From Macrostomum lignano (taxonomy: Eukaryota), in assembly GCA_002269645.1 (NCBI GenBank), contig NIVC01002261.1, positions 1 through 45,391 of the forward strand: a stretch of DNA of 45,391 bases, in the 5' to 3' direction. Every line of letters starts with the position of its first letter. Position 1 is the stretch's first letter. A program made the translations under genes and the position numbers. This document shows positions 1 to 43,895 of the stretch, in pieces. A model generated the notes under the pieces. It did not search any database. It saw only the letters and a program-made list of their open reading frames with translations, and had not been told where the DNA came from.

Positions 1-3000
1 CACGAAGATCTAGCAGGCGAATCCGAAGCCTCAGAAGAAGCATCAACAAACTGCGACGAGCTCACAGAGCAGGACTGTCGCCGAGAGACGACGACATGCA
101 GCCTCCATCCGAAAGAGCCGAACACCAGCTCGCTACCGCCGTAAGCAATACTACTGAAACTGCTTTTTTGGCAACATGTAACAACGCTAGCGAATATAAA
201 TGCATTTCGTGTTCAGTATTTCGTTTTGGTTGTTTATATCACGCTTTCACTTTGCATACTTCCCGCTTCAGGAGTGCGAGTGAAGCACGCTTGCGAGGGC
301 AAATCTCTGACCATCAGATGTCCATCCAGATACGTCATCCGGGTGCTGCGCGGATTCTATGGCAGAACATCTAACAAATACTGCGCTCGAGGACCCCGCA
401 AGACATACAAGTGCAGCAGCGGCCGAGCCAACAAAGTCATCGCTTCCAAGTGCAACAACCGGCGAGCATGCAGGGTGCGAAGCAACAACGCCGTCTTCGG
501 AGATCCTTGCCGCGGAACATACAAGTACATGACCGTGAGGTACAGATGCCAGCTGGCTTCATCGGTTGTGTCTAGCTACGCGAAGCGCAGAGCTCGACTT
601 GCACGACTGCACAAGAGACGATTGAACGCTCTTCGATCGAGGCACAGGCGCAGAGTCGCTCGACTGATCCGACTGCTGAGACGAGCTAGACGAGGATCGA
701 AGAGATGCGTCCGAAGGAGACGACCTTCCAGAGGTTAGTCGGCTATTCGGTCGACCGTTTATTTAAAGCAAAACAAATGCAGAAATTATTGATGCCCCAC
801 CTAGTAAATTGCTTCCTCAAATATCTAGTGAGACTTTGAGCTACGGATTTTAGAGTTGAAGCACTTTCACCGAAGTTCATACGTTGCTCCTCACCGAATC
901 ACAACATACTCAGGCAAGAAATGCGGCCGACGAACCTGCCGAAGGAACCAGAGTGCGTGACACGAAGATCTAGCAGGCGAATCCGAAGCCTCAGAAGAAG
1001 CATCAACAAACTGCGACGAGCTCACAGAGCAGGACTGTCGCCGAGAGACGACGACATGCAGCCTCCATCCGAAAGAGCCGAACACCAGCTCGCTACCGCC
1101 GTAAGCAATACTACTGAAACTGCTTTTTGGCAACATGTAACAACGCTAGCGAATATAAATGCATTTCGTGTTCAGTATTTCGTTTTGGTTGTTTAATCAC
1201 GCTTTCACTTTGCATACTTCTCCGCTTCAGGAGTGCGAGTGAAGCACGCTTGCGAGGGCAAATCTCTGACCATCAGATGTCCATCCAGATACGTCATCCG
1301 GGTGCTGCGCGGATTCTATGGCAGAACATCTAACAAATACTGCGCTCGAGGACCCCGCAAGACATACAAGTGCAGCAGCGGCCGAGCCAACAAAGTCATC
1401 GCTTCCAAGTGCAACAACCGCGAGCATGCAGGGTGCGAAGCAACAACGCCGTCTTCGGAGATCCTTGCCGCGGAACATACAAGTACATTACCGTGAGGTA
1501 CAGATGCCAGCTGGCTTCATCGGTTGTGTCTAGCTACGCGAAGCGCAGAGCTCGACTTGCACGACTGCACAAGAGACGATTGAACGCTCTTCGATCGAGG
1601 CACAGGCGCAGAGTCGCTCGACTGATCCGACTGCTGAGACGAGCTAGACGAGGATCGAAGAGATGCGTCCGAAGGAGACGACCTTCCAGAGGTTAGTCGG
1701 CTATAATTGTCTTGTTTTTATTAATTTTTGTAGATTTGTAAAAACCTTTTTCTAATTTCTTTTTTTGGTTTATATTGTTATTGAAAATACCTGCACCCTT
1801 TTTAGGTTTGTGTGCTAAAAAACGGTGCTCCAAAGGCAAGCGTTGCATTGTGAAACGAACTATCACAAAAGCGGGCCGTTTTCACTCAGAGAGCGTAGAA
1901 TGACAAAGGATATCGCAAGCAGATTCGAGCTCTGAAACTAAGGTTTGTAGAAGTCGGCGATCTGCAAAGTTGTCTTACGGACGGGCATCAGCTGCTTTTA
2001 AGAAGGCTATTCGGAAAGCATCTAAGGCGAAGAAAGCTGCCTCTGTTAAGAGCTTGAGAAGATCCTGGAGACTTCGCAGAAGATCTTACGTTTTGAAGCT
2101 TCGTAAAGAAAGAAGAAAGTTCTTGAAGGCTAGAAGAAGTCTCAGCCTGCGTTTTAGGCGTAGCCTATCAAGCCATTCTCGAAAGAATCGAAGAACTAAG
2201 ACTGCTGTACGAGCTGCTGTTTGTGTAGTGAATCAATGTTCAAAAGTCAAGTGCAAGTCGGGATTCTCTTGCAGGCATGTGAGGCGGTTTACAAAGAAGT
2301 TTAGCGCATTCCTTCGTCAGAAACGAGCTTTGACAAAGTCTTACTTTGCCAGTCACAAGAAGATCACGTTGGCTTACCGAAGAAGAAGTCGCCAAGCTGC
2401 AAGAAACTTCCGCAAGTATGCCGCAACTTATCGCTCGAGCTTCAAGAGCAAAATCTGGCAGTGCGAAGAAACGTCTCAGAGTTGCGTTCCGTCGTCGAGT
2501 AAGAAGCTTCAGAAGAAGTAGGCGCGCAGCTTTCAAGCAGTATCGTCGCTCAGTACGACTGGCTAGGCGCCGCTTGGCTCAAAGGCTTAGATCACTGCGT
2601 AAGAAGCAAGGCAAGGGAGTTTTCAAGAACCGCGTTAGGACTGTGGCTCGATGCATCAAAAAGGCGACGAGTGAGTGCTTTGTTTTTTTTAACTGCGACA
2701 GATATTTTAGTTACACTACTGCAATATACCTGCATTTCTTTTCGCCCACCTTTGCATATCTAGGATCCTGTCGAAAAGTTCGATGCTCAGCTGGAAAGCG
2801 CTGCGTGGTTAAAAAAGTTCCAACTTGGTGGTACAGGCTTTACCGCATCAGTGTGAAGAGGGCCTACAGACGGTTCCACACCCGGCTACGCCGCACTGTG
2901 CAAAAACTCCGACACCGACACAGAGTGCACCGTAATTTTTGGCACGGAGAAGCAGAAGAGCAGGAAAATCATTTTCTTTCTGGCTAAGACACGCTTTGAG

Positions 3001-6000
3001 ACGCATTCGCAGATCCCGGCGCTCTCGAGTCCGTCGTGTTCGCAGGTCAAGGCGTAACCTGAAAAGATTTGTTAGAAAATTGCGACGAGCTCGCTCTCGA
3101 CTGTGGGGAAGGTTCAGAAGAGCTGCCAAGGCGCTATGGAAGGCGATTCAAAAAGCTTTTTAGAAAATTCTCTCGACGAAAGGGACGGCGTGGACGTTCT
3201 TCTCGTAGACGACGCGTTCCAAAATCAGTTGTTCGCCGATTCAGAAGGAATCAGAAGAAGTACGCCAGACGCGTCTTCTCATTGAAAAGCTGGTTCGGAA
3301 GAAAAGCGAGAATTTTCAAGGCTCTGTATTACAAGTCTAAAAAGGCTACCAAAGCAGCAAAGAAATCGATCAGGAAAAAGATGCGCTCTTTGTATAGAAG
3401 AATTTCCAGGGTTTATCGAAGAAGACTGAAACGAGCTGTGGTTTCGTACTACAAGAAAAAGAGCATCCTTGCAACCTCTCTACAAAGAAGGCTTCGAATG
3501 TTGCGCAAGCGACTTGGCAGACGCAAGGGACGGCGATTTATTCGTCGGGCCATGTGTGTTGCCAAAAATCCTTGCAGAAGAAAGCGCTGTAGACGGGGAT
3601 ACAGGTGCAGAGTGCGCAGAGTCAAGTCAAAGAGGGGTCGAAAAATCTCTGTTGGACGCTGCGTCAGAAAGTCTAGTAAGTAATCGTTATGTTAATTCAA
3701 TAAATAGCAATATTTGCTATTCCTTCTGCCCATAAGCTCGTATTATTTCCGAATGAGGCAAACAGTGCATGATATTTTTTTAATTTCAGATCCATGCAGC
3801 AGAAAAAAGTGCGGAAAGAACCGTCGCTGTGTGGTGAGAAGGATCCCAACTCGAGCCTTCCGGCTGTACCGCTTCTATCTAAGAGTCAGTAGGAAACGTT
3901 TCCGTCTTCGAATGCATGGCATACGCAGGAGGCTTGGCCGTAGGCGTCGACGTCTGGCGGCCCGCGCTATCCGTCGAAACCGACGCTGAGACGATCAGCC
4001 GCTCGGCGATTCCGAGGCCGACGACGGGCAAGACGCTTCCGAAGTTTGAGACGGTCACTGAAGCGCACTCTTCGAAGGCATCGCCGTCGTTCGACCCGGT
4101 CGTACCGACGAATTCGCAATAAGCTAAGACGGCGTCTGAGACGCGCCACAAGGCGACAATACAGACGACTCATGCGAAACAAACGGCGCTACATTACCCG
4201 CGCCGTTTGTGCACCAAAGAGAGCAAGTGAGTCACATAATTTCATTTTTTCTCACATGCGGTTTTTGCACTTAGAGACGCGAGAGAGATATATTATTTTC
4301 CGATCAAATTCATTCAGATCCATGCAGTAAGAAGCGCTGCCCAAGTGGATCAGGTGCGTCGTGCGCAGAAGAGTTCCAAGGCTGTACAGGCGCTTCAGAA
4401 AAATCGTAAAGCGTCGCTATAGAAGATACGCTATTGCAAGGCGCCGGCTCTCCAAACTTAGTCGCAGAAGACGAGCGGCAACTGCTAGAAAGTTGAAGCG
4501 TTCCCTGAAAAGAAAATTGAGAAAGATCTGGAAAGCCTTTAAAAGACGCGGAGCCTTTAAACGAAGTGGGCGTTTGGTAGCTCGCTGTTATAAGCCAGGA
4601 AGTAAGTTGACAAAGGCCCGAGATATTCGCTTGCGGCTTGCGCATCGCTAACTTATGCTGTCTCTGAATTTTAGAGTTTTGCCCGAGCGGATACCGTCGC
4701 CGGGGACGAACTTGCGTCGGCTACTATCGGGTGTGCCGCGAACTTTCACTATGATTAGGAACAAGCGCGGAGGGCGGTGCATCAGTAAGCCAATTTTATT
4801 GTATAACGACTAGGAAAGCTTTCTCAAAGACTTTCCAGCGATTATCATAGATTATTAACTATTGCTCTCAAAAAAAATATTGCAGAGTTCAACAAGATTT
4901 GCAAGTCCGGCAAATTTTTGTTCAATAACCGCTGTTGGCGAAAATGCCCTCGTGGCACCAGACGCTCATCAAGACGGTCCTGCAAGCGTAAGTTAAAAAG
5001 GGGCGTTGTCTAGTTTTTTTGTGATTCTTTACTTATTGGTAAAGCAGAATATCAACTCAACCTGGCATTGCGTAATACGGTTTTAGTTGTCAAGTCATGT
5101 CCTGCATTCATGCTCAGTAGACGATGCGTCAAGAGATGTCCAAGAAGATTCGTCGCGGTGGGTCGTCGATGCAGGCGTAAGTTTAGAAGTCTGAAAACAA
5201 TCCTATGCTTTACTGCCTTTTGAACCGATTTCACAACTAGCCAAAATGTTTTTTACAGGATGCCCACGAAACTCTTTCCGACGAGGAAACAACTGCTACC
5301 GTGAGTAAATTCATTGTTAAAAACCAAATCTTGACTACTGACTCGTACAACAGAAATTTTTTGCTTACCGCGTTGCTTTCGGTTGGTGTATTACAGGCCG
5401 CAGAATTTACTGCCGCTCTGGATTTTCTTACCGAGGAAGATGCAGAAGTAGATGCCCGGCCCGCACTTATGCAAGAGGACGAAGATGCATCCGTAAGTAT
5501 TGCGCAAGAGAGCAAGCAGTCCAATGTCTGTGCAAAAACAAAAAAATCATTCAACCATCCAGTACAATAGTGGATTAATGCAATCAGCTACGACAAATTT
5601 TAGGAGCTCGCTGTCCACGCGGATCAAAGGCCAGACTCAGCATCCGAAGGGGCAAAATCGTTTGCATAAGTATGAACTATTTGATTTTTATATGCGGTTT
5701 AGAAGCGGGCTGCTTTTTAAATACGAACTCATTCTCATCTTCTGCATTTCCCTTTGCAGGAAAGCGCGGTTGCAAGCGTGGCCTGGTTTACTACTCTGGC
5801 TCTTGCCGATCGAAAGTGCCCCAGTGGAACCCGTCGACGACGCTGGTACTGCCTGAAGATCTGCAAGAAGGGCTTCATGAGAGTGGGATTCCGCAGACAG
5901 AGATGCATCCGGGCATACTGCTACAACAAGTTCCGCATTGGCCGGTCCTGTGTGAGAAAGTGCCCAGTCGGCTACATTGGAATTCGACGAAAGTGCCGAA

Positions 6001-9000
6001 GAGTTTCCATCTCGTGTCCCAAGGCCTACGTTAGGCTTGGCCGCGCGCTCTGCCTCAGAAATTGTCCAGCCGGTTTCACCAAGAGGGGCAAACAATGCGC
6101 GTACTCCGCCTGCCGCAAGGGAACATACAGGTACCGAGGCACCTGCATGAAGGGCTGTCCAGCTGGAACAAAGCGACGAGGATCGTACTGTTTCAGTAAG
6201 TTATTTGCCTGTTCAATGTAGCATGATTTAACCCTTTCAACGTCATAAAAGTTATTCCACACATCTAAAATTTTAGAGAGAAGCAAATGCCGTTTTGGTC
6301 GCTTCGCCTACGGAAAGCGATGCCTGGTGAGGTGCCCGCCTGGTCACTATCGAAGCTTTGCTAGACGATCGTGTGTCAGTGAGTATTTCTCTTTGATTCG
6401 GCTATGCTTCTCTTAGCTGTAACCGCTAATTCGATATACGCTATTCAATTGCTAAATCAAAACATTTCAAATCTCTTATATAAATCTATTATGTTCCAGG
6501 AATCAAGCGCTGCAAAAAAGGTCTGCTTAGATTCAGAAGACTCTGTCTCAAAACGTGCCCTCTTGGCTTCCGAAGAAAGAGACGAAGCTGCGTACGAAAA
6601 TACGTCTGCCGAAACGGAAAGATGTACAGAGGAGTCTGCATCGTTACCAAATGTCCTTCTGGAACTCACAACATTCGAGGATCGTGCGTTCGCACGCGTA
6701 AGTCTGATTAAAGGGTTGAATGAGGGATTAATTAATTGCAAAGCGCAATGACCAACTTACAAACATCTTTTTTTTCATTCCATCTTAGCTCGCCTCTGCC
6801 CGTCTGGTAGGCTGCTGCTAATCAAGCCGAGTGGTGCTAGATCTTGCGTTCGAGCCTGCCCAAGGACCTACACAGTTGTTAGGTCGCGGGGCTCTTGCAA
6901 GCCTACACGGTGTCCAAAGGGCATGTACCGTCTGGGAATAACATGCAGAAAGTCCTGTCCCAAAGGATTCCGTGCTCGAAGAGGTCGCTGTAGAGCTGTC
7001 AGAAAGAGCTGCAAAAGCGGCCTGTTCCGACTCCGCAGGCGTTGTGTGAAGCGATGCCCAAGAGGTTTTAAGGCCAGAGGAGGTCGCTGTAGACGAGTGC
7101 CTTTTAGATGCAAGAAAGGAACTTTCAGGTTCAGAAGGCGTTGCGTCAAGAAATGCCCGAAAAAATACACCGGTCGCGTCTACAAGCGGGCGAGAAGAGC
7201 GCCAGTCCGATACTGCAGGCCTATTAGAAGCTGCAAGAAGGGACAAGTGCTCGTTTACAGACGGTCACGGAGTCGCTACAGGTCAAGATGTGTCAGTGCA
7301 AGCAAGCCTTGCAAAACTGGTTACGTGCTGAGAAGACGTGTCGTACGATTTAATAGAGGCGGAAGGAGGGTGCGCAGAGTGCTAAGACTGTGCAAGAGAG
7401 CCAGGGAAAGCTGTGCCAAGGGATTGTTCTTGTTCCACGCCAAGTGCAGAAAGCAGTGCCCAAGAGGAATGAGGACATTGTTGGTTAGACGATCAAGAAA
7501 AGTTGTGCGCACATGCAAGCCAAGTAAGGCCGTGATTTCATCTGATTGAATAGAGAGAATTCTATATTTCCTAGAAAATAGTGTTTAAAAAGCTAATTTG
7601 CATACAAACTTTCAGAATGCGGTAGAAAGTTTGCTTTCCGAAGCAAATGCGTCAGAAGGTGCCCACGTGGATACACAGCCAGAAGATTCAGGTTTATCAA
7701 GTTCTGCAGGAAAGGTGCGAGTTTAATTTAATAAAGTGCCTGATTGAACAGTGTGCTAATGGAATATCTCCAGTTTCTCTTACAAGCATCGATTTAAACA
7801 TTTCAGATTGCCCAAGAGGAAGATTCGCGTTCAGAAATTCGTGCATCTCGCGGTGTCCAGCAGGCTACAGAAAGCGAAGATATCGAGTGTATTCCAGACG
7901 ATCAAGAAAGCTTGTTTCCATCACCAGCTGTGCCCGGAAAACTAGTAAGTTGGCTAGCCCTGATACTTAACCGAGATAACGTTTAATAACTGTCAATAAA
8001 TATTTCATTATTTTCTTTATTGTAGAATGCCCATCAGGATACCGAATAGTGTATCGTCTCAAGCGAAGTGCTAAGGGCAGGTCAATCCGACCAACTAAGG
8101 TCTGCAGACCAGGTATTTTTTAGCTTTTTGTCCTTCGGATAAGCAAGTAAAGGCGTAGCAAGCATAATAAAAATAACTATAACAACCTATATTTCTTCAG
8201 TGAGACAGAAGAGCTGCAGATATCCAACTGCTCTTGCCTTTGGTCGCTGCTTCCGCCGTTGCCCATCCGGTTACTACAGACGGTCCAGAACTGTTCGCGG
8301 GCGAAGACTTGGATTCTGCCTGCCAACAAAGCTGACAGTCCTTTGTCGCCGCCGTCGCTGTGGCAAGACAAAGATGTGCATCATCAGCCGAAGAACGAGA
8401 GTTTTCAGGGCCGGAAAGCGAGCAGTTCGTCGAACTGTACGAAAGCCCGTCTGTGTTCCACGATGTAAGAAAGAACATATTCTGTGCTTAAGATAGCATG
8501 ACTAGTATTTAAGTTTTCGAAATCGACTTCTGAATTTCCCATTTCCCTGCAGACTGCAAAGCCGGAACCTATCGCCACAGGCGCAGATGCGTTCGAAAGT
8601 GTCCACGCGGCTACATTAAACGCTCTTCGAAGCGTTTCAGAATGCACAAGGGCCGCAGAATGGCATACAAAGTGAGACTCTGCACGAGGAAACTGTGCAG
8701 GTATCCCATGGCCAGATATAGCACACGATGCGTTAAGCGTTGCCCAAGCAGATATGAAAAGAAAGTATATCGCCTCAGATTCCGCTACAGGCGATCGAAG
8801 TTCATCAGACGCTATGCTGTATGCCGACGCAATCTCTGCTCAAAGGTCTCCTGTTCAAGAAACCAGAAGGTGCATTGTAAAGACTCTTCCAGGGCGCAAA
8901 GATCGGCAAGTGGCTGTTTGTGCTAATAAAAACCCGTGTGCCCGGATGAGGTGCCGACGAGGATTTAAATGCCGAATTAGACGAGTATCTGGGCGCAAAC

Positions 9001-12000
9001 GAGCATCATGTGTTCCTTCTATGCCTTTCTGCAAGGCTGGATTAGTTGGCTTTGGCAAACGATGTCAGCGGCGTTGCCCTAAAAATTATAGGGTTTTGAG
9101 CAAGAAGATCGGAGGACGGCTGTACAGAATGTGCGCCAGAGACGCATGCTCACGAGGCCGATTTTTCTCAAGTGGACGATGCGTCCCGCGCTGTCCGAGT
9201 GGCTTTGCTGGAAAATCTATCAGATATTCTAGGTCATACATCTTCAAGTACTGCGCCCCGAAAGCTTGTAAGCGCAGACTGTTTAGACTTGGCGGACGCT
9301 GCGTGAAGCGCTGTCCTTCAGGATACAGGAGACGATACTTCAGGGCTAGACGAGGTGTTCGAAGATACTGTGCCTCATCTGCCTGCAGGAAAGGAACATA
9401 TAAGCTTGGAAAGCGTTGCGTCAAGAACTGCCCAAAGAATTACAACAAGAAAACAGTAAGAAAGGGGTCGAAATCTTATGCAGCTTGTGTGCCCAAGAAA
9501 TGCCCCGCCAAGTCTATGTTTATTAAGGGTCGCTGCAGAAAAGCATTGAAGGGCTGCTACGATAGGACATTCGCTTGCAAGGGTTGGGCTAGAAAGAAAC
9601 GGTGCTCAAAAAAGCTGGTTAAGTACTTGTGTCCAGCGTCCTGTGGCACCTGCAATCCTAAGAAGAGAAAGCTCTGCACCTGCATATCCATGGGCGATCC
9701 ACACTACCGTACATTTGATGGAAAATGGATCCACTTCATGGGAAAATGCAAGTATCTGTTGGCCAAGTCCAAACTACGAAAATCTTCTAGGTGCAACTTC
9801 TCTGTTGCAGCAAAGAATGAAGTTCGTGGAAAGAGACGAAGAGTCAGCTGGACAAAATTCGTTGACATAAACATTCATGGGTTGTCTATCCGCTTGCACC
9901 AGAAACGTCGTGTCTTCTTCAACGGCAAGAGAGTTCGAAGGCTACCTGTTTCGCTCTACAAGAGAGGCAAGAAGCTTCGAGTTTACCGTAGTGGAAATAA
10001 TGTTGTTGTTGAATCAAAGTACTGCGGCTTGTATCTTGAGTTCAATGGCAGATCAGTGGCCGAACTGCACCTTCCAAAATCCCGGTTCGCTGGAAAGGTT
10101 CAGGGCATCTGTGGAAATTGCAACGGAAATCCTAAGGATGATTTGAAAACCAGAAGTGGAAAGGATGTCTCCAAGCTGGGTTCAAAGGGATTCGTGCAGA
10201 TTGGACAATCCTATCTTGTCGCTGACCGCTCCACAAAGAGCTCGCGATGCAAAGTCAAACCTGCATCAACATCAAAATGCTCAAAATCAATGAAGCGAAA
10301 GATCAAATCTAGCAGATTCTGTGGCCTTATTTCAAACAAGAAGGGGCCATTCAGAGCTTGCTTGAAATCCGGAAAAGTTGATTATACCAAGATCTATAAG
10401 AGCTGCAAGTTTGACGTTTGTCAGTACCGAAAAGCTAAAAATCGCCGAAAGGCTGTGTGCGAGTCCCTGGAAACTCTTTACAACGCTTGCCTGGCCAAGG
10501 GATTCCGAGTGAGCTGGAGAAAACACCGGTTCTGTCCATTGAAGTGCGGTGCCAATTCTGTATTCAGAAGAAAAACAAGTGGCTGCCCAAGAACATGCGC
10601 CGATCTAGGTCGACGAAGAAAGTGCCGTCTGCCATCCCGAGAAGGCTGCGCCTGCAAAGAAGGCTACGTACTCAATGGAAAGAAGTGCGTCCCCGAAAGA
10701 ATCTGCGGCAAAGTAGTGCCACTTGATCTGGCCTTCGTTGTCGACGGAACAGATGACGTCAGTTCAGATGAGTTTGAAACACTGAAGAACTTGATCATCA
10801 AGCTTCTTACAAAGTACAGACTGTCTTCTAACTCTGTACGACCAGCAATTGCAGTGTTCGGCAGAACAAGCCCAACTGTAAGTCTGTTTAACCAGCGCCC
10901 CGGAAAAGCTGACTTCATGGCATTCGTCAGAAAAATGAAGAAACCAGGAGGATCAGCTGATAACTTGGATGCCGCTCTCCGGGTTGCCAACAAGGTGATG
11001 ATGAACCCAATGGGAGGCGCAAGACCAGCGGTTCCAAAGTATATTCTGTTATTGAAGAAGAGCAAAGTTCCAGCGTCATCGGAAAGTGTTGTCAAGAGCG
11101 AACTAGATTCGCTGAAAAAGGCTAACGTCCACGTGGTTGCTGTCACTCTCCCACCAACAAAACCAGGAAAGACCGACACGGCTATTGGTGGATTGTCAGT
11201 CATCCCAGCACGAGTGCCACCGTATCTTGCAATCCCGAAGATCACCAAGGAGCTGGAAAAGACAGCTGGCTGTACTTCCGGATATAAACGAAAAGGCAAA
11301 CGCTGTATAGATGTGAACGAGTGCGCAGCAAAGGTACCACCATGCCATTCTGACAGCACCTGCGTCAATTTGCCAGGCAGCTTCATCTGCCTCTGCCGCG
11401 AAGGCTTCCGACATGACAGATCCCGTGGATGTGTGTCTCTGAAGAAGGAGAAGTGCCCAAGCAAACCGAAATGCGACAATGGCTACCGCTTTGATAAGGC
11501 AAATGGCAAGTGTGTTGACATCAACGAGTGCAAAGAGAATCCGTGCTTGGGTGATAGTGCTACTTGCGTCAATACACCAGGCAGCTTCAAGTGCAAGTGC
11601 AAGACTGGTTTCGAGTACAACAAATACTTTGGTTGCGTTGACATCGACGAATGCAAAGGAAAAGATCCTTGCGCTGGTTCCGGAAAGTGCATCAATACAC
11701 TTGGCTCGTTCAAGTGTACCTGCGACGAGGGTTACACTTACAAAACCGGTCTCGGCTGCAAGGATATCGATGAGTGCGCAGCTGGATCGCATAATTGCAA
11801 GGGCGGTTCGAAGTGCATCAACACGGCTGGTTCTTACAACTGCAGCTGTGACTCCGGCTATCGCTACGAAAGCAACAAGTGCATTGACATTGACGAGTGC
11901 GCTGAGGACAGCAAACTCTGCGACGCATCTGCCACATGTGTAAACAAGAAGCCAGGCTATGAATGCCAGTGCAAACTTGGCAGCAACTGGGTGCACAAGG

Positions 12001-14316
12001 CTGGAAGAGGGTGCGTGCCAGATGAGAAGAAGGGAATGTCTCAACGAAAGGTTGACTTTATCTTCACCATTGATGGTAGCGACAAGCTGAAGTCATCTGA
12101 GAAGGACATCAAGGATTTCTTGACCCGCCTGCTCAATAAGTTTAAAGCCAATGAGTTGAAGGGTCTGAGCGTGCGTGCATCGGCCATTATTATGGGCAAA
12201 AAGGGAGGTGCGGATATCAAATTTAGCCAAGCTGACCTGTCTGGAATCGATGACAAGATCAAGGCGCTTAACTTCCCTGGAGGAAAGGCAAACCTTCTCG
12301 ACGGAATGAAGAAGGCAAATCAGGAGCATGCGAAGGCCAGAAACGGAAGCACGCCGATCGTGTTCCTCATCACTGGTTCGAACATTAAGCCGGGCGACAC
12401 CAACCTGCCAGCGATTAAGAGACTGTCTGATAACTTCAAGTCGACCGGAAAGTTTTTCACTGTCCAGCTGACACCGGCACGAGAGCCGTCCGACTGGAGC
12501 CCGCTGTATTCCCGCGACGAAATCAGCCACTACGTAACCGTGATCAGATCCGCTGACATTAACAGCATCTACAAGCTAATCTACAAGAGAATCTATCCGC
12601 TGATCAACTGTCCAGAGGGCTTTGTCAAGGTTCGCGGACTCTGCCAGCTGCAGACAGCAACAATCAAGTACTGCAAGACCGAAGACAAACAGTTGCGAGC
12701 AGTTGGAAGCACATGGCAAGAGGAGTGTTCCGAGTTCAAGTGCACCAACAGTGGAATCGAAGTCGTGTCCAGAAAGTGTCTTGGTTACGACGGCCAATGC
12801 TACTCAACGGAGGAGTACTTCCCATGCACTCAGGTCACTGGATCTCTGAGCTGGAAGTGTCGTTGCAAGTAAGGACCCTTACATTCAGTCTTACAAATTA
12901 TCTTTGCATCAACTATGGGTAAAAACGGTGCTTAGTTCTTGATGAACAAACTCAAAGTGACATTTTTAATAAGATTTCGGTACTATGCCATCTCCACATT
13001 TCAGACTGCGCACCCGCACAAACAAGAAGGGAAAGAAGGTCGAGTCCCTGCATTATCAGTCTATCGCCACCTCGAAGGAGAAGGTGCTCACAGAGAGTGG
13101 CCGCCAGTGTGTGTTCCCCTTCAAGTATCAGAACAAGTGGCTGTACAACTGCGACGAGTACAACGGCAGGTATTGGTGCTCGTACCACCGAATGCACGAG
13201 ACCGGATCATGGGGCTACTGCAAGATCAAGGAGAGCAAGAACCGCTGTACCGATCCGTTCAACCCGAGCAAGGTCTACATCGAGGGCGAGCGCTGGAATC
13301 ACGGCTGCAATGTGATGGAGTGCACCAAGACCGGATTGAAGAGAATCCCTAGTGAGTTTTTTGTTTTAAGCCCGTGACGATGTCTTCAGTCAGCAGCTGC
13401 ATTAATAGATACTTGTGTAGGTTTTTATTAAACTGTATGGATCTAAGAACGAGTAGATCAAAGATGGGGTCCTCACAGCAATCATAATAAAAGTTCTGCT
13501 GCAACAATTTGCAGAGTGCCAGGCCGCTGACAAGACTTGCAAAGCCCTGAACGAGGACGGCTATTCTTGCCACTATAGTGGCAGCCTGCACAAGAACTGC
13601 ATCTGCGTCCAAAACTCGGCCGGCTGGGGCAAGAACGAAGTGGTGACCGGCGACAAGGCCAAGGAAGTGAGCAGCTCCGGAGGCAGCGTCGTTAGCGTCT
13701 GCGTGGATCGCAGCACTGGAAAGCGATACGAGCAGGGACAGGAGTGGGTCAACTCGTGCTTCAAGTACAAGTGCACCGCCAAGGGAGGCGAGCTGGTTGA
13801 GTCCGGGTGCAAACAGAAGGACGGCAAGTGCCGCAAAATCGGCGAGAAGGGCTTCGACTGCGTTGTCAAGGGCAAATCGGCGAAAAGCTGCGAATGCGCT
13901 AAGGACAGCGCAGGCAATCCGACCCTAAGTGGCGTTGTATCAGGTAAGTTTCGTATCGGCTTAATGGTGGCTTCAAGATTTCTCTCGAAATTCTATGCGG
14001 CTAATGCAGAGTACTCAAAGTGAAGGTCGATTGACACGAGCATCTGAAGAGACTAGAGTTCGGATCAAGGACCACTAGAAGTTATAACTTCGTTTGGTCC
14101 TTGGTTCGTAAGGTCCTTGGTTTGGATATTATCTAGGAATGTAGATGGAAAGCGAGTAGATAGAAAAATGATGCGAAGAGAATGAGGGAAACTCACTGAA
14201 TTCAAACATTTCGCCCAACTGCAGGACGCAAGATGATCCAGGTGCTGAAGGTTTCGAAAGTGAGCACCTCGCTGAAGACCGTGGCTAAGACTGTGGCTTC
14301 CAAGACCAAGAAGTAA
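1..14316 (+). CDS. Giant Arg/Lys-rich, Cys-rich modular extracellular protein (adhesive/mucin-type, ap1-like); 5'-truncated, about 27 exons, apparent frameshifts
   Basis: Exons read from GT-AG sites and reading phase: <1-140, 272-733, 854-1100, 1231-1691, 1806-2670, 2764-3675, 3790-4226, 4318-4601, 4675-4784, 4886-4987, 5087-5176, 5259-5300, 5397-5492, 5604-5669, 5760-6195, 6277-6378, 6500-6697, 6789-7523, 7616-7714, 7807-7944, 8026-8112, 8201-8464, 8553-12868, 13005-13351, 13515-13943, 14010-14107 (uncertain), 14225-14316 (ends ...TVASKTKK-TAA). About 11.6 kb coding. About a dozen 1-nt indels must be assumed, mostly before 5900. The start and signal peptide lie outside the window. Confidence 0.88.
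286..549 (+). other. SUEL / rhamnose-galactose-binding lectin domain, copy 1
   Basis: HACEGKSLTIRCP...VLRGFYGR...C...C...KCNNRRACRV...VFGDPCRGTYKYMTVRYRC matches the Gal_Lectin consensus (CE, A/G-x-YGR, FGDPCxGTxKYLxVxYxC). Confidence 0.9.
918..4601 (+). other. Follistatin-N (FOLN)-like Cys knots alternating with long Arg/Lys-rich helical tracts
   Basis: Repeated C-x4-C-x5-C: KKCGRRTC, LCAKKRCSKGKRC, NQCSKVKCKSGFSC, SCRKVRCSAGKRC, NPCRRKRCRRGYRC, NPCSRKKCGKNRRC, NPCSKKRCPSG. Most are followed by a Cys-free basic tract and then one lone Cys. Confidence 0.7.
1245..1507 (+). other. SUEL lectin domain, copy 2 (1-nt deletion near 1420)
   Basis: Near-identical to 286-549. aaccgcgagc replaces aaccggcgagc and shifts the frame; YIT replaces YMT. 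Confidence 0.85.
4675..9540 (+). other. Array of furin-like Cys-rich repeats, extremely basic
   Basis: About 24 units of C-x2-G-x5/6-C-x3-CP-x-G-[YF]-x(n)-C, e.g. CKSGKFLFNNRCWRKCPRG, CKSGLFRLRRRCVKRCPRG, CRKGTYKLGKRCVKNCPKN. There are also half-units and three FOLN-like knots. Confidence 0.75.
9555..9653 (+). other. ShKT domain
   Basis: CYDRTFACKGWARKKRCSKKLVKYLCPASCGTC: six Cys with the C-x-D...C..W....C...CPxSCxxC pattern. Confidence 0.85.
9675..10708 (+). other. VWD - C8 - TIL cassette
   Basis: [29 protein letters not shown]...GICGNCNGNPKDDL (VWD); FCGLI...GPFRAC...SCKFDVC...VCESL..LYNAC (C8); CGANSVF..KTSGCPRTC...C...EGCACKEGYVLNGKKCVPERIC (TIL). Confidence 0.92.
10718..11260 (+). other. 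VWA domain 1 (degenerate MIDAS)
   Basis: PLDLAFVVDGTDDVSSDEFETLKNLIIKLL...VRPAIAVFG...ARPAVPKYILLL...LKKANVHVVAV. DxSxS appears as DGTDD. Confidence 0.85.
11270..12015 (+). other. Five calcium-binding EGF repeats plus partial EGF linkers
   Basis: DVNECAAK, DINECKEN, DIDECKGK, DIDECAAG and DIDECAED, each with C-[VI]-N-x-x-[GP]-[SG]-[FY]-x-C-x-C. Confidence 0.92.
12048..12600 (+). other. VWA domain 2 (degenerate MIDAS)
   Basis: KVDFIFTIDGSDKLKSSEKDIKDFLTRLL...VRASAIIMG...GGKANLLDGMKKA...STPIVFLITGS. Confidence 0.75.
12672..13897 (+). other. Three copies of an approximately 65-70 aa FN1/VWC-like Cys module
   Basis: C-x7/10-G-x2-W-x3-C-x4-CT-x2-G...C-x3-D-x2-C...C...C-x-C starting at 12672, 13246 (split by an intron) and 13700. 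Confidence 0.6.
13099..13221 (+). other. Fibronectin type II domain
   Basis: GRQCVFPFKYQNKWLYNCDEYNGRYWCSYHRMHETGSWGYC matches FN2 (CxFPFxY...C...WC...WGYC). Confidence 0.9.
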
Positions 14317-14461
14317 CTCAAATCTGCCCCTGATGAACGCAAAACTTAACTTTGAGACAACTCCGCAAACTTCAGTTTTAACCTGAAAATTTTTTGGTGG
14401 TGGGAAGAACATTTGCTTAATTGGCTGCAGCTTCACTGAAGCCTGAGACAGGCGTGGAGGA

Positions 14462-14467
14462 AAATAA
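14462..14467 (+). promoter_or_regulatory. Polyadenylation signal of the giant gene
   Basis: AATAAA about 145 nt after the TAA at 14314-14316. Confidence 0.55.
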
Positions 14468-15588
14468 ATTATTTCAATTCCGTTAAATTTACACAATGAT
14501 TCTCGTTCATTAGCTTCTTCATTTTTTTAGTTCAGCGTTGGTGGCAGCCGAAGATGAGCCGAATCATAATGCACTCGGCGCCCCTTAGCGACTAAAAACC
14601 GTGCTGTAAGCGTAGAAATGCTTTACAGAGTGAATGCGGCATGTTGCCGCCCTTCCTTAGAGAGCACACCTATGATTAGAGTTTGTACAGAAACCACAGA
14701 ATGTACACAGAATGCAAGGACGCTTTAATCACTCAAGACGGGAACTCGCAAACCAATGTGAAAAAATCACGAGGCTCGTTTAAAAGCAGGGTTATGGCCA
14801 AGCTATTATGGCAGCAAACTTACCATGCCTCTTTTTGATCTTTTGGTAATTAATAACTGTCGTCTTCTCATGACTCCTACTGTATAGTAGGTTCTTGCGC
14901 AACGTTTCATTTGCTTCCCACGCACTTAGCTAAGAATGTAGCCTTCTCCAGCTTAAAGTTAAGCCCAAAAGGCTTTATATTTGACTATGGCTTGACCATA
15001 GATATGATACATGTACGTGTCTATGTGAATTTAGTAACCGAAATTTAGTAACGCAATGGTGCAGCTGAGGGATATCCAATATGTATTACTATAATATAAT
15101 GTTACATTGTACACCTATTATACTTATATGGGTGATTTCAATATTACTATATGCATAGATTTAAGAATTTTTTCCGATCGGGATTATCCCGTATCCTCCA
15201 GCTACGCGAATGGTTGAATTTAGTAACGAATATACGAGAACTCGTAGTCACTCTTGAAATTTAGGAACCCCTCAAATTCTGGGTACCTATATCCGGTGTG
15301 AAGGTTTCTATTGTCCTGCAACTTCACTCTTACATATTGAACTCTTCAAGTGTTACTAAATTCAAGGACACCCTACATGTACAATGAATCGAGCATCAAC
15401 TTTCTTACAGTGATTTGCGAGTTTTCCGTCCTAAGTTATTAAGAAGTCCTTGACTGGCACTGGAACTGGAACGTTCTTCATCAACTTTAACCATACGAAC
15501 CAGACAGGACAAATGCTACAAATAAAACCATCCATTTTTGGTCCATCAATATCTCAGCTTGCACCCCTTGAAAATTTTCATCTTAAAG

Positions 15589-16049
15589 TCGAGCACAAAA
15601 GAATTCACCGATGAAGACCCAATGGAAGTCTCCGTGCAAGAGACTGTAATGGAAGGGTATTCGCGACCTTGTCAGGACTGCCAGGCACTGCTTCCTCCGA
15701 GGCGACCTCGAAAGTGAACTTTGCCCTGAAAATGTCACTGCTCTTCTTTACCAGTGACCGGCTACGCTACCTCGGCAGCATCCCACGGCTCATCCAGTTT
15801 GAACGACAGGACGAGCCACTTTCTTTCCAACGGAAGATCCCGCTGCAGGACGGACTGGCGGACCACCTCGGTGGAAGGTCGGCCGGCCTTCAGGGGCTGG
15901 CGGAATGGGCGACCCTCGCCTCCCCTCTGTGTCTACGGATCACCCTGCAGCTAAGTCAAGTAAAGCATCGAAAGTACTTTATTAATTCTAAGCTGCTTCA
16001 CATTGCAGAAATGCTACGCAGCTTCAAAATCCTCAACCTGAAGAAATAA
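15589..16049 (+). other. Coding-like GC-rich fragment of unknown identity (possible orphan exon or pseudogene)
   Basis: GC-rich block between AT-rich flanks; ORF 15669-16049; acceptor-like ttcacattgcag near 16008. No recognisable domain. Confidence 0.25.
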
Positions 16050-16991
16050 ATTGGCACACATCAGGGCATCATTGATCTCAGTTCGAAGGGAAACTAATTA
16101 GCAACAAAAAACCGGAGAATTTGGTTTGCCCTGTTCAAAATAAAATCAAAATCGGGCATTGAATGGAGCCAATCGATAATATCGAGTTTAATTATGCCAA
16201 TTCAAGAGGCGGCAGGAAAACCAGCCGGCCTCGGGTGCAGATCACGCACAATGGTTGCAATAGATTGATTACAGCAGCAACTAAAAACAACTCTGTGAGC
16301 GACAGAACTGATGCCGGACTGACAGCCCGCCTGGATCAGGTGTAAAAAGGTAAAACAGCCAGTGGCGCTGCTAGTCATGGGTGAGTCATGGATGAGTCAT
16401 GAGTGAGTATGCTGGATAGTCAGAGCAGCACAATGAAGCGACACGAACAGTATAGCAGTATTGTACAGGTGTGAATCGATGACGCCGAGTGCGCGGAGTG
16501 CTTAATGCCGCTGGCCAGTCGTATAAACGGTGCCCGGCTCCGTGTTCTGCTGGGGTAAAAAGATGAAAACAGAAACAAAAAATCGAAAAGTGGCGAGGGT
16601 CCAAGACATTGGGTTACTACAGGCTAGAATACAAACGCATTGTGGAGCCGCAGTTTGCTGCATGGGGGCCAAAAAAAGCAATTCACAACGCCACTGTATC
16701 ACATTAAGTATCACACTGTATCATGATTAGGTAATACTTTTAGAACAGGTGGGTCGATAATAGCGCTTGGGCCGGTGCACGAGAGGAAAAGGAAGCTGAG
16801 CTAAGAGTTTAATCCTGTGGGATCGGCTGGACATCAGTCTACCGAGTTTGCAGTTTTTAGTTATCATACTACTAACTAATCTACCACTCAGTAGCGCATT
16901 AGGGAGAATATTTGTATCAGAATTCTGCTAATGAGGAAGCGTAATGAGAGCTCGCAGCGGTAAGTTCGGGCGCACGGCAAGCGAAATGGAG

Positions 16992-17150
16992 CCGGTAGGT
17001 GCGGCAGGTCACACCTGGTAGGTGCGGCAGGTCACACCTGGTAGGTGCAGCAGGTCACACCTGGTAGGTGCGGCAGGTCACACCTGGTAGGTGCGGCAGG
17101 TCACACCTGGTAGGTGCGGCAGGTCACAACTGGTAGGTGCAGCAGGTCAC
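16992..17150. repeat. 23-bp minisatellite, about 7 copies
   Basis: Unit ctggtaggtgc(g/a)gcaggtcacac. Confidence 0.95.
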
Positions 17151-17155
17151 GCGGA

Positions 17156-18638: not shown

Positions 18639-18865
18639 CTACTGACAGTAGAGTAGCATGAATACGGTCGGTTTTTTGAAAAGAAAATTTACAAAACTTG
18701 TAGCGAATGACAGACTCAAATTAACAGTAGTAGCGAGCGCTAACTTCATTACCAACTCTAGCTGATGGCACTGCTGCAGGCAATGATTGACAGGCACAAC
18801 GATTTGAACTAAACTGCTCTCGTCATTTTGTAGCAACCGCCCGAGTGCGCGCGGCTTTAAATATG

Positions 18866-18871
18866 TTTATT
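18866..18871 (-). promoter_or_regulatory. Candidate polyadenylation signal of DEDD
   Basis: tttatt on + is AATAAA on -. It is the first canonical hexamer I found downstream of the DEDD stop, about 940 nt away. Confidence 0.45.
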
Positions 18872-24303: not shown

Positions 24304-24809
24304 AGTTTAGTAGGATTTTTAGTAGAAAAACGACTGAACTGAAATGTATAATTATTATAGATAGATAGATTGTTCAAGCGCACTTTATTTACTTAAAAAC
24401 GCCCTGTGTCCTCGCGTACAGTTCCTTTTTCTAATAGCCTAGATTACAATTTGATAACTGACCTATATTGTATTATCGCCCTTTTTTGCTATTCAAAAGC
24501 TTGAATAAATGTAGCGTTTTTGTGTGATTCAGGGTTTTTATTTGTTTTTTTAATCCTAAAGCAGAAACTTTAGGTCATTACTTCAAAAAACCGTTTAATA
24601 AACTATCAAAAATTGTTTTATTTTTTCACAGCGCGATGTTTCAAAAAAACTTTCTTAGGAAGAAAACTACGGAAGTACCTTCTTTAATACAAATAAATTA
24701 TAAACTGTAGTCTATCTTGACAACTGGAGCAACCGCTAATATTTAGTCGCAGGCGAATAGTAGCAAACTTTTTTACAAGTGTCACGGCTCTGCATTGATT
24801 TTTTGACAA
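24304..24809. promoter_or_regulatory. Putative bidirectional promoter (DEDD / Ly6)
   Basis: 506 bp between divergent ATGs; keeps many CpGs, unlike the flanking introns. Confidence 0.65.
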
Positions 24810-43889: not shown

Positions 43890-43895
43890 AATAAA
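43890..43895 (+). promoter_or_regulatory. Candidate polyadenylation signal of the T-box gene
   Basis: AATAAA downstream of the probable last exons. Confidence 0.35.

What the first reader, a model, noticed from the sequence alone, without database searches (positions are those of the whole stretch)
1..14316. Giant polycationic lectin/VWD/VWA protein: candidate glue or mucus scaffold, ap1-like but with a different domain set
Seen: about 3,900 codons without reaching the N-terminus. The first roughly 2,800 residues are very Arg/Lys-rich and nearly free of Asp/Glu, followed by ShKT-VWD-C8-TIL-VWA-cbEGF5-VWA-FN2. Known: VWD-C8-TIL is the polymerising cassette of gel-forming mucins and VWF. As I recall, the Macrostomum lignano adhesive protein Mlig-ap1 combines K/R-rich regions, a C-type lectin, vWD, C8, TIL, vWA and EGF. 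Inference: this is an ap1-related paralog or analog with SUEL lectins, a furin-repeat array, ShKT and FN2. It could act as a polycationic cohesive component complexing acidic glycoproteins, or as an antimicrobial mucus scaffold.
Basis: partly seen in the sequence, partly recalled or inferred. Interest (0 to 1): 0.85.

Follow-up and report, generated by a model that had tools for sequence, protein, structure and literature searches.

The report
Giant polycationic secreted flatworm footprint protein
The window holds most of a Macrostomum lignano gene for a roughly 3,600-3,800-residue, extremely basic secreted lectin/VWD/VWA protein that is not the known glue protein Mlig-ap1, yet its peptides sit unremarked in the published mass-spectrometry tables of the worm's adhesive footprints.

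Summary
Window 1-14316 (+) carries a multi-exon gene that runs off the 5' edge and stops at 14314-16. My conceptual protein has about 3,830 residues. The first 2,437 are 37.6% K+R, 0.5% D+E and 7% Cys. They are followed by ShKT (borderline), VWD-C8-TIL, VWA, five cbEGF, VWA, VWC-like modules and FN2. Upstream lie two SUEL lectins and a furin-like repeat array.

The organism is Macrostomum lignano. The gene is the unnamed BOX15_Mlig000911g1 / UniProt A0A1I8I5M9, transcript RNA815_38 (3,590 aa, pI 11.47).

It is not Mlig-ap1 or ap2. It has no C-type lectin, no short K/R tandem repeats and none of the ap1/ap2 antibody epitopes. Its cationic part is non-repetitive amphipathic helix plus small Cys modules.

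Nineteen published footprint peptides map to it. In one replicate it scores above ap1 and ap2. None of eight tested peptides appears in the stored tail-tissue or PNA pull-down tables.

The window copy has about 15 one-base frame breaks, most likely assembly errors.

Best reading: a secreted polycationic lectin scaffold laid on the substrate, probably not from the adhesive gland. The gland of origin is untested. I rate it a new variant of a known kind, with moderate to high interest.

The parts
1..140 (+). 3' part of an exon (K/R helix after a 3-Cys module) of SUEL unit 1. The gene continues upstream of the window. There is a frame break near position 75.
   Evidence: The same reading is found in frame in UniProt A0A1I8I5M9.
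272..733 (+). Exon with SUEL lectin 1 (domain about 289-552) plus a K/R tail. It carries 8 Cys and the YGR and DPC..GT.KY motifs.
   Evidence: Pfam SUEL_Lectin, 72 bits. Footprint peptides SNNAVFGDPCR and CQLASSVVSSYAK map to 481-585.
914..1100 (+). Exon with a 3-Cys module (KKCGRRTCRRNQ.CVT) plus a K/R helix, SUEL unit 2. Frame breaks near 946 and 1035.
   Evidence: Read in frame in P0038. The acceptor at 914 was chosen by analogy with other module exons.
1231..1691 (+). Exon with SUEL lectin 2 (about 1248-1510) plus a K/R tail. The frame break at 1425 is CC-GCG here against CCGGCG in unit 1.
1806..2670 (+). Exon with 3/4-Cys modules and K/R amphipathic helices. Frame breaks near 1898, 1938 and 2465. 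The apparent in-frame TGA at 1901 is a product of these shifts.
   Evidence: Footprint peptide AAVCVVNQCSK maps to 2213-2245.
2764..3675 (+). Exon with a Cys module (CRKVRCSAGKRCVV..PTWWYRLYR), a long K/R amphipathic helix and two further Cys modules. Frame breaks near 2940 and 3131.
   Evidence: It is collinear with paralog P0184. AlphaFold2 of 3132-3675 gives helices 2-16 and 31-126 and a hairpin at 157-179, mean pLDDT 67.6.
3790..4601 (+). Two exons (3790-4226 and 4318-4601) with Cys modules and K/R helices. Frame breaks near 3987 and 4341.
4675..9536 (+). Furin-like (CxxC-P-x-G type) cysteine repeat array with about 26 CP motifs. It spans 15 exons: 4675-4784, 4886-4987, 5087-5176, 5259-5300, 5397-5492, 5604-5669, 5760-6195, 6277-6378, 6500-6697, 6789-7523, 7616-7714, 7807-7944, 8026-8112, 8201-8464 and 8553 onward. 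A few interspersed 3/4-Cys modules lie near 8300 and 8830-9000. Frame breaks near 4740, 5810 and 8867.
   Evidence: Pfam Furin-like, 53.6 bits. Exon map. Peptide YPTALAFGR maps to 8221-8247. At 8867 the window has an extra A relative to L001.
9552..9653 (+). ShKT-like six-Cys module (borderline).
   Evidence: Pfam ShK, 18.2 bits against a cut-off of 20.9. Peptide YLCPASCGTCNPK maps to 9624-9662.
9681..10706 (+). One VWD (9681-10163, with GDPHY at 9693-9707), C8 (10317-10538) and TIL (10545-10706).
   Evidence: Pfam scores 112, 51.6 and 39 bits. Peptides GFVQIGQSYLVADR and FDVCQYR map here.
10722..11264 (+). VWA domain 1. The MIDAS position reads DGTDD, which is not the canonical DxSxS.
   Evidence: Pfam VWA. 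Read from the sequence. Three footprint peptides map here.
11310..12014 (+). Five calcium-binding EGF modules (DVNEC, DINEC and three DIDEC), with a short Cys spacer after the first.
   Evidence: Pfam EGF_CA, 5 stretches, 112 bits. Peptide YFGCVDIDECK maps here.
12051..12602 (+). VWA domain 2. The MIDAS position reads DGSDK.
   Evidence: Pfam VWA, second stretch. Peptide FSQADLSGIDDK maps here.
12669..14316 (+). C-terminal Cys-rich tail. It holds a VWC/Fn1-like module (12669-12869), an exon at 13005-13351 with FN2 (13108-13221) and a second VWC-like module, an exon at 13515-13943 with two further Cys modules, and a last exon at 14225-14313 followed by the TAA stop at 14314-14316. No cystine-knot hit was found.
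   Evidence: Pfam fn2, 29-31 bits, and a weak Fn1_2 hit. Exons from P0001. Peptide DSAGNPTLSGVVSGR spans the last splice junction, 13943|14225.

Best explanation
The window carries one genomic copy of an expressed Macrostomum lignano gene: transcript RNA815_38 / RNA1310_79.1, NCBI BOX15_Mlig000911g1, UniProt A0A1I8I5M9. It encodes a secreted extracellular protein of roughly 3,600-3,800 residues with pI about 11.5.

Anatomy (shown):
- An N-terminal polycation of about 2,400 residues. It is made of SUEL (galactoside/rhamnose) lectins, non-repetitive Arg-rich amphipathic helices, small 3/4-Cys hairpin modules and a long furin-like cysteine repeat array.
- A C-terminal assembly region: ShKT-like, one VWD-C8-TIL with a GDPH motif, VWA, five cbEGF, VWA, VWC-like modules and FN2.

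The protein is deposited on the substrate (shown by published peptides).

Proposed mechanism (inferred). It acts as a multivalent cationic cross-linker and cohesive scaffold. The roughly +900 charge and the lectins bind polyanionic, galactose-bearing glycoconjugates: mucus, glycocalyx, conditioned surfaces and possibly Mlig-ap2 glycans. The disulfide-rich C-terminal modules make Ca2+-dependent protein-protein contacts.

The indirect evidence favours a source other than the duo-gland adhesive cell, such as body mucus or rhabdite-type glands. This point is the least secure.
For: Identity and expression:
- Exon 8676-12869 is 99% identical to BOX15_Mlig000911g1.
- A0A1I8I5M9 shares 2,332 of its 2,640 residues in exact blocks with my model.
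- In Dataset S2 of PMC6410801, sheet footprints_Trypsin_intact_1, RNA815_38 (10,771 nt, 5UTR_CDS_3UTR, 3,590 aa, 418.9 kDa, pI 11.47) scores 63.9 with 18 peptides. Mlig-AP2 scores 49.6 and Mlig-AP1 31.9 in the same sheet.
- In the second replicate it has 6 peptides.
- All 19 peptides map to the model from window 481 to the last exon, and one spans a splice junction.

Selection and anatomy:
- The two genomic copies differ by 32 synonymous and 7 non-synonymous changes.
- Domains are confirmed, and composition.
- The mean hydrophobic moment of the K/R region peaks at 100 degrees: 0.479 against 0.306 +/- 0.017 for shuffles, z about 10. There are no short tandem repeats.
- AlphaFold2 predicts long helices and a hairpin.

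Source outside the adhesive gland:
- None of 8 tested peptides occurs in the stored text of the tail-tissue sheets, where AP2 scores 42, or of the PNA pull-down.
- Double RNAi of ap1 and ap2 leaves no adhesive vesicles.
- All ten adhesive-organ transcripts from two in situ screens map to ap1 or ap2 (PMC6410801; PMC8621496).
Against: - There is no in situ, antibody or RNAi datum for this gene, so the gland of origin is inference only.
- The footprint samples also contain tubulins and a vitellogenin/apoB-like protein. Presence there does not prove a role in adhesion, or even specific secretion.
- The stored copies of the tail and pull-down tables are truncated ('738 more rows' cut), so absence from them is weak evidence.
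- No signal peptide was seen, because the N-terminus lies outside the window.
- Ligands of the SUEL, VWA and FN2 domains are untested.
- A single VWD unit does not show polymerisation.
- The window copy itself has about 15 frame breaks.
Confidence: 0.5

Rival explanations
1. It is a third, overlooked component of the duo-gland adhesive itself. On this reading it is an ap1-like cohesive protein, co-secreted with Mlig-ap1 and ap2, that bridges ap2's Gal-beta1,3-GalNAc glycans through its SUEL lectins and binds the glycocalyx through its positive charge.
For: - Its footprint score equals or exceeds that of ap1 and ap2.
- It shares the polycationic character and the VWD-C8-TIL-cbEGF core with ap1.
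- Its SUEL + VWD + C8 + cbEGF set resembles the sea-star cohesive protein Sfp1 as described in PMC6410801.
- Heparin, which blocks attachment, would neutralise this protein too.
Against: - Double RNAi of ap1 and ap2 removes all adhesive vesicles.
- Tail-specific in situ screens recovered only ap1 and ap2 fragments in adhesive organs.
- Its peptides are absent from the stored tail-tissue tables, where AP2 and AP1 are found.
Confidence: 0.2
2. It is chiefly a defensive component of surface mucus. Either it is a cationic antimicrobial scaffold, or it is a polyprotein cut at its many R-x-K/R-R sites into cationic amphipathic peptides.
For: - It has Arg-rich amphipathic helices without repeats.
- It carries lectins that could bind microbial rhamnose or galactose.
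- It is present in material shed onto glass.
Against: - No processing data exist.
- The tryptic peptides cover the whole length, so they do not show fragmentation.
- The large disulfide-rich C-terminal matrix modules are not expected of a peptide precursor.
Confidence: 0.12
3. It is a reproductive or egg-associated secretion (shell or cement gland, or seminal fluid) that contaminates the footprint preparations.
For: - The top-scoring footprint protein is vitellogenin/apoB-like, so non-adhesive material is present.
- Cement and shell glands make sticky, basic secretions (general knowledge).
Against: - It was not found in the germline/neoblast lists or the positional candidate lists as held. These look-ups were inconclusive.
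- There is no evidence of sex-organ expression.
Confidence: 0.1
4. The copy in this window is a decaying, non-functional duplicate, and the expressed protein comes from another copy.
For: - The window has about 15 frame breaks and a 99.5%-identical internal duplication.
- M. lignano carries several near-identical copies of many genes. L001 is a second copy with about 1% divergence.
Against: - The breaks are all single-base indels.
- Ten of the 12 break sites are read in frame in proteins predicted from other assemblies.
- Amino-acid substitutions against A0A1I8I5M9 are almost nil. This excess of indels over substitutions is the mark of long-read consensus error, not of decay.
- L001 and P0038 each have their own different frame breaks.
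- The ratio of 32 synonymous to 7 non-synonymous changes indicates purifying selection.
Confidence: 0.08

Closest known systems
Mlig-ap1 (Macrostomum lignano adhesion protein 1, GenBank MH586844) and its Macrostomum orthologues
   Same: - Same species.
- A giant secreted protein with extreme positive charge.
- One VWD-C8-TIL unit followed by calcium-binding EGF modules.
- High Cys content.
- Found in footprints.
   Different: - ap1 has a C-type lectin before the VWD, 7-19 EGFs, no VWA, SUEL, furin-like, ShKT or FN2 domains, and K/R regions on both flanks built of short tandem repeats (14-mers repeated 25-56 times).
- This protein has SUEL lectins, two VWA, five cbEGF and FN2.
- Its cationic part is only N-terminal. 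It is non-repetitive amphipathic helix plus Cys modules.
- None of the ap1 epitopes is present.
Sea-star footprint protein Sfp1 (Asterias rubens)
   Same: As described in PMC6410801, Sfp1 combines galactose-binding lectin, VWD, C8 and cbEGF domains in a large Cys-rich cohesive footprint protein.
   Different: - Sfp1 is not polycationic.
- It has a different module order and further domains.
- No sequence comparison was run here.
Zonadhesin-like / IgGFc-binding protein (FCGBP) VWD-C8-TIL proteins
   Same: - They are the best sequence matches of the VWD-C8-TIL unit outside M. lignano, at 30-43% identity.
- The GDPH motif sits at the start of the VWD.
   Different: - Those proteins carry many tandem VWD-C8-TIL units and are not basic.
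- Among the 150 best matches in the 1.84-billion-protein library, only the M. lignano relatives exceed 20% K+R.
Gel-forming mucins / von Willebrand factor
   Same: They share the VWD-C8-TIL assembly and a VWA domain (as in VWF). They are secreted and disulfide-rich.
   Different: This protein has only one D assembly, no cystine-knot hit and no Pro/Thr/Ser mucin domain. Mucin-type end-to-end polymerisation is therefore not indicated.
ap3-type GRK(HS) polycations of other flatworms (Mile-ap3, Tmed-ap3)
   Same: They are very large secreted Lys/Arg-rich proteins proposed to act as cohesive elements through charge (PMC9229212).
   Different: ap3 proteins are low-complexity repeat proteins almost without domains. 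Here the cationic region is structured and Cys-rich, and it is fused to a domain-rich C-terminus.

Membership tests
Flatworm ap1 cohesive proteins (Mlig-ap1-like) | C-type lectin domain directly N-terminal of the VWD | tested here: not met
   There is no Lectin_C hit in Pfam scans of the whole region upstream of and including the VWD. A furin-like array and a ShK-like module occupy that position.
Flatworm ap1 cohesive proteins (Mlig-ap1-like) | VWD-C8-TIL core | tested here: met
   VWD 112 bits, C8 51.6 bits and TIL 39 bits.
Flatworm ap1 cohesive proteins (Mlig-ap1-like) | Long run of calcium-binding EGF modules (7-19 in described members) | tested here: inconclusive
   There are five cbEGF modules, flanked by two VWA domains that ap1 lacks.
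Flatworm ap1 cohesive proteins (Mlig-ap1-like) | Flanking low-complexity GRK/KR short tandem repeats (SRKPRRKNRKSRKP x56, KNNKRRVRKARKNN x25, KSRKVN x84) | tested here: not met
   None of these peptides occurs in any of the six frames. No 6-mer occurs more than twice in the K/R region. Tandem Repeats Finder finds nothing in 1-15000.
Flatworm ap1 cohesive proteins (Mlig-ap1-like) | Sequence orthology or paralogy to MH586844 | not testable with these tools
   The Mlig-ap1 sequence is an image in the supplement. It was not retrieved by an epitope-based protein search.
Flatworm ap1 cohesive proteins (Mlig-ap1-like) | Expression in adhesive gland cells and a non-adhesive RNAi phenotype | not testable with these tools
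   Only indirect proteome evidence is available.
Gel-forming mucin / VWF polymerising proteins | Several N-terminal D assemblies (D1-D2-D'D3) | tested here: not met
   There is a single VWD hit in the part of the protein held in the window. The N-terminus is unseen.
Gel-forming mucin / VWF polymerising proteins | C-terminal cystine-knot dimerisation domain and a PTS mucin domain | tested here: not met
   Pfam finds only fn2 and a weak Fn1_2 hit in the last 377 residues. There is no Ser/Thr/Pro-rich stretch.
SUEL / rhamnose-binding lectin domain | About 80-residue domain with 8 Cys and the YGR and DPC..G..KY motifs | tested here: met
   Pfam scores 72 bits. The motifs GFYGR and GDPCRGTYKY and eight Cys can be read in both copies.
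FCGBP / zonadhesin-like proteins | Tandem array of VWD-C8-TIL units | tested here: not met
   There is one unit only. The similarity is limited to 25% of the query.
Follistatin-N/FIMAC-type hairpin (for the small Cys modules) | HMM match to FOLN or related models | tested here: inconclusive
   There are only faint hits: CFAI_FIMAC_N at E=0.028 and FOLN at E=1.2, in one of five modules. The pattern [ND]PC-x4-C-x2-G-x2-C-x-V occurs 9 times. AlphaFold2 gives a beta-hairpin.

The most novel reading that the evidence does not exclude
A family of giant, structured polycations forms a previously unrecognised major structural component of the material M. lignano leaves on surfaces. The family comprises this gene, a 3,863-aa relative with pI 12.1 also present in footprints, and a 35-67%-identical paralog. 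On this reading these proteins lock the glycosylated surface-binding protein Mlig-ap2 or mucus polyanions into a cohesive layer through SUEL-lectin binding to glycans plus charge. The current two-protein model of flatworm temporary adhesion would then be incomplete.
Probability: 0.2. Interest if true: 0.8.

Novelty: new variant of a known kind. Interest (0 to 1): 0.6.

Why it matters
Flatworm temporary adhesion is currently explained with two proteins, ap1 and ap2. That model is being used as a blueprint for biomimetic reversible glues.

An unnamed protein of about 420 kDa and pI 11.5 gives as many footprint peptides as ap1 and ap2, yet it has never been localised or knocked down. Two outcomes are possible:
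- It is a missing cohesive or mucus component that shapes how the glue meets surfaces.
- It is a marker for a different secretion that contaminates footprint preparations.

Either result sharpens the model, and either can be tested directly with the in situ and RNAi tools already established in M. lignano.

The protein also shows a second way to build a secreted polycation: non-repetitive Arg-rich amphipathic helices tied together by small disulfide modules, rather than low-complexity GRK repeats.

Tried and rejected
- **Is it Mlig-ap1 or ap2?** Rejected. The epitopes are absent and the domain set differs.
- **Fetching Mlig-ap1 for alignment.** Supplement Fig. S11 is an image; only ap2 is held as text. 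An epitope-concatemer protein search found nothing. No ap1 peptide occurs in any of the 184 fetched proteins.
- **Spliced model as query for the representative search.** I used 8868-12467 instead.
- **First dynamic-programming gene model.** It hid frameshifts behind false introns at 953-1061, 1850-1942, 2873-2988, 3889-3998 and 8846-8950. I rejected these after comparison with paralog P0184 and with P0038. The second model wrongly read through the real intron at 2671-2763 and one acceptor, and I corrected both by hand.
- **In-frame TGA at 1901.** It looked like a pseudogene lesion. P0038 shows it is the out-of-frame ATG-ACA.
- **Apparent furin-repeat matches elsewhere in the window.** Matches on the minus strand at 31.4-32.3 kb and 41.5-41.9 kb and on the plus strand at 35.5-35.9 kb correspond in part to a minisatellite (31457-32248) and to a T-box exon ORF. 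I found no sign of a paralog there.
- **Minus-strand ORFs inside the gene.** They have no Pfam hits.
- **Searches for RNA815_38, Mlig000911 and expression class.** Nothing was found in main texts or in the supplements of Arbore 2015, Brand 2020 and Grudniewska 2016. These results are uninformative, because the tables are truncated and a control id was also absent.
- **Lengerer 2018.** The paper is not held.
- **Searches on rhabdites and on a single-cell atlas.** Neither yielded anything usable.
Full report
**What is in the sequence**

Three-frame translation of window 1-14316 (+) shows long K/R/C-rich open segments that switch frame at short AT-rich gaps.

- SUEL_Lectin, 72 bits, two copies.
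- A Furin-like array, 53.6 bits.
- VWD, 112 bits.
- C8, 51.6 bits.
- TIL, 39 bits.
- Two VWA.
- Five EGF_CA.
- fn2, 29-31 bits.
- ShK reaches only 18.2 bits against a cut-off of 20.9.

No Pfam family matches the larger minus-strand ORFs inside the gene. The gene leaves the window at position 1 and ends with TAA at 14314-14316.

**Organism and gene**

The 1,398-codon exon at 8676-12869 is 99% identical to the M. lignano hypothetical protein BOX15_Mlig000911g1 (P0001, 2,079 aa). That protein's contig, NIVC01001495.1, ends inside the gene (L001).

An exhaustive HMMER search found UniProt A0A1I8I5M9 (P0038, 2,640 aa, 'SUEL-type lectin domain-containing protein'). It shares 2,332 residues in exact blocks with my model.

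A collinear paralog that is 35-67% identical exists as fragments: A0A1I8JAD7 / A0A1I8GDF5, BOX15_Mlig016567g1 and A0A1I8GF43. It carries an extra VWA_4 domain and a KTNKASETKQKT repeat.

None of these entries has a functional name.

**Gene model and sequence quality**

Mapping P0001 gave GT-AG introns of 81-281 nt, nearly all phase 1.

A splice- and frameshift-aware dynamic programme, corrected by hand against P0038 and the paralog, gives about 25 introns and a conceptual protein of about 3,830 residues. It also gives about 15 single-base frame breaks, near 75, 946, 1035, 1425, 1898, 1938, 2465, 2940, 3131, 3987, 4341, 4740, 5810 and 8867.

I read these breaks as consensus errors of a long-read assembly rather than decay, for five reasons:
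- Every break is a 1-nt indel, and several sit at short homopolymers. At 8867 the window reads AACCAGAAGG where L001 reads AACCAGAGG.
- Ten of the 12 break sites are read in frame in proteins predicted from other assemblies.
- Amino-acid substitutions against P0038 are almost nil.
- L001 and P0038 each carry their own, different breaks.
- The window and L001 differ by 32 synonymous and 7 non-synonymous changes in 1,919 codons. Their indels are concentrated in non-exonic DNA: 7 in 1,558 nt against 4 in 7,192 nt.

The apparent in-frame TGA at 1901 is the out-of-frame ATG-ACA of '...RRRMTKGY...'.

Positions 1-746 and 961-1704 are a 99.5%-identical tandem copy of a [Cys module - K/R helix - SUEL] unit. 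Whether the gene truly has two or more such units is open, because P0038 starts at a unit boundary and shows one.

**Protein anatomy**

Residues 1-2,437 of the model are 37.6% K+R, with 13 acidic residues in all, 7.1% Cys and net charge about +900. The whole model has pI 11.55 and a mass of 447 kDa.

The polycation is not low-complexity:
- No 6-mer recurs more than twice.
- The mean hydrophobic moment peaks sharply at 100 degrees per residue: 0.479 against 0.306 +/- 0.017 for shuffles.
- AlphaFold2, run on a single sequence with mean pLDDT 67.6, folds 3132-3675 as long helices plus a Cys hairpin.
- Nine small modules fit [ND]PC-x4-C-x2-G-x2-C-x-V, with only faint FOLN/FIMAC hits.
- About 26 furin-like CP motifs follow.

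Three further points about the C-terminal region:
- The VWD starts with GDPHY. That motif is autocatalytically cleaved in MUC2 and FCGBP (established knowledge; not tested here).
- Both VWA domains lack a canonical DxSxS MIDAS motif (read from the sequence).
- There is one D assembly only, no cystine-knot hit and no PTS domain.

**Comparison with Mlig-ap1**

According to PMC6410801 and PMC8621496, ap1 is 5,407 aa. It has a C-type lectin, then VWD-C8-TIL, then 17 EGFs, flanked on both sides by K/R regions made of short tandem repeats. No vWA is listed.

None of the ap1 or ap2 antibody epitopes occurs in the window. There is also no Lectin_C hit and no tandem repeat.

The ap1 sequence itself could not be obtained, so paralogy is untested. 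By the family's defining features, however, this protein is not an ap1.

**Protein-level evidence**

Searching the supplementary tables of PMC6410801 with predicted tryptic peptides was decisive.

- Dataset S2 is the footprint proteome. It lists transcript RNA815_38 / RNA1310_79.1 (10,771 nt, 5UTR_CDS_3UTR, 3,590 aa, 418.9 kDa, pI 11.47).
- In sheet footprints_Trypsin_intact_1 it has 18 peptides and a score of 63.9. Mlig-AP2 scores 49.6 and Mlig-AP1 31.9 in that sheet.
- In replicate 2 it has 6 peptides.
- All 19 distinct peptides are encoded by my model, from the SUEL units (481-585) through the K/R and furin regions (2213-2245, 8221-8247) to the last exon. DSAGNPTLSGVVSGR spans the 13943|14225 junction. 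None of the 19 occurs in the paralog fragments.

The polycationic N-terminal part and the domain-rich C-terminal part are therefore both translated and reach the substrate.

A related entry of 3,863 aa and pI 12.13 is also present. It shares three peptides and has its own VWA_4-like peptides.

The paper does not discuss either protein.

The same samples contain tubulins and a vitellogenin/apoB-like protein, so footprint presence alone is not proof of function.

None of eight tested peptides occurs in the stored (truncated) text of the tail-tissue sheets, where AP2 scores 42, or of the PNA pull-down.

**Mechanism**

Shown:
- It is an extracellular-type, disulfide-rich multidomain protein.
- It has extreme positive charge.
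- It carries two or more galactoside/rhamnose-type lectin domains.
- It is deposited on glass.
- It is under purifying selection.

Inferred: it acts as a multivalent cationic and lectin cross-linker of anionic glycoconjugates, while its VWD/VWA/cbEGF/FN2 end provides protein-protein and Ca2+-dependent assembly.

The source gland is unknown. Three observations favour a gland other than the adhesive cell, such as body mucus or rhabdite-type glands:
- ap1 + ap2 double RNAi abolishes adhesive vesicles.
- Tail-specific in situ screens found only ap1 and ap2 fragments in adhesive organs.
- Its peptides are absent from the stored tail tables.

All three are indirect.

The rivals are a third glue component, a defensive cationic mucus protein or peptide precursor, a reproductive secretion, or a dead copy in this window.

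**Novelty**

The gene is in databases only as a hypothetical protein, and in the literature only as a row in a supplementary table.

Among the 150 best matches in a 1.84-billion-protein library, only M. lignano relatives are K/R-rich. A word-based search with the N-terminal 946 residues found only the M. lignano paralog.

I rate it a new variant of the known kind 'giant secreted VWD/lectin/EGF adhesive-type proteins'. It is distinguished by a structured, non-repetitive polycation. Its expression site and function remain to be tested.

Noticed in passing
window 1-746 and 961-1704: This is a tandem duplication with a period of 960 bp and 742/747 identities. The unit is [Cys module - K/R helix - intron - SUEL lectin exon]. 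The two copies differ only by four 1-nt indels and one substitution. It is either a very recent duplication or an assembly artefact, and more units may lie upstream.
   Followed up: partly
window 75-8867 (about 15 sites): Single-base frame breaks are scattered through the coding sequence. The second genomic copy (L001) and UniProt A0A1I8I5M9 have different breaks of their own, for example at 6007, 6085 and 7057. Every public assembly of this locus therefore seems to carry indel errors, which explains the truncated database models.
   Followed up: yes
PMC6410801 Dataset S2, sheet footprints_Trypsin_intact_1 (not in the window): A second giant basic protein (3,863 aa, 457 kDa, pI 12.13) shares the peptides CQLASSVVSSYAK, SNNAVFGDPCR and YPTALAFGR with this gene. 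It also has VWA_4-like peptides of its own (NSIVYVFTDASPSR, SGSVIYVFTDASAK). It could be a close paralog or a longer isoform or upstream part of the same gene.
   Followed up: partly
window 35429-40806 (+): Three ORFs cover T-box profile positions 1-26, 26-115 and 115-167. The stretches between them are filled by minisatellites: 30 bp x 56 at 35989-37669, 15 bp x 66 at 38691-39679, and 20 bp x 19 at 40080-40465. The last of these is open in frame with the second T-box exon.
   Followed up: partly
window 28374-30664 (+): An ORF with a weak u-PAR/Ly-6 three-finger match (E=4.5e-4, below the cut-off) runs straight into a 21-bp x 90 minisatellite at 28772-30658. The minisatellite is open in frame as (SECVNIS)n, with an N-glycosylation sequon in each unit. 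Whether it is coding is unknown.
   Followed up: no
window 20111-21148 (-): A 346-codon ORF has a weak TRADD-like N-terminal domain hit (E=1e-4). It ends in a (GACT)50 microsatellite that translates as (SQSV)n.
   Followed up: no
window 21000-28500 versus 31500-36500 and 40500-44000: Base composition is strongly uneven. A block of 29-36% GC lies next to blocks of 55-66% GC. Ten minisatellite arrays occupy about 7 kb of the 31 kb downstream of the gene.
   Followed up: no
L001 8893-17326 versus window 14617-23039: The second genomic copy stays collinear for a further 8 kb downstream of the gene, but at only 89-97% identity and with many gaps. Across the gene itself identity is 99%. This is consistent with homeologous or allelic copies whose coding sequence is under constraint.
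   Followed up: partly
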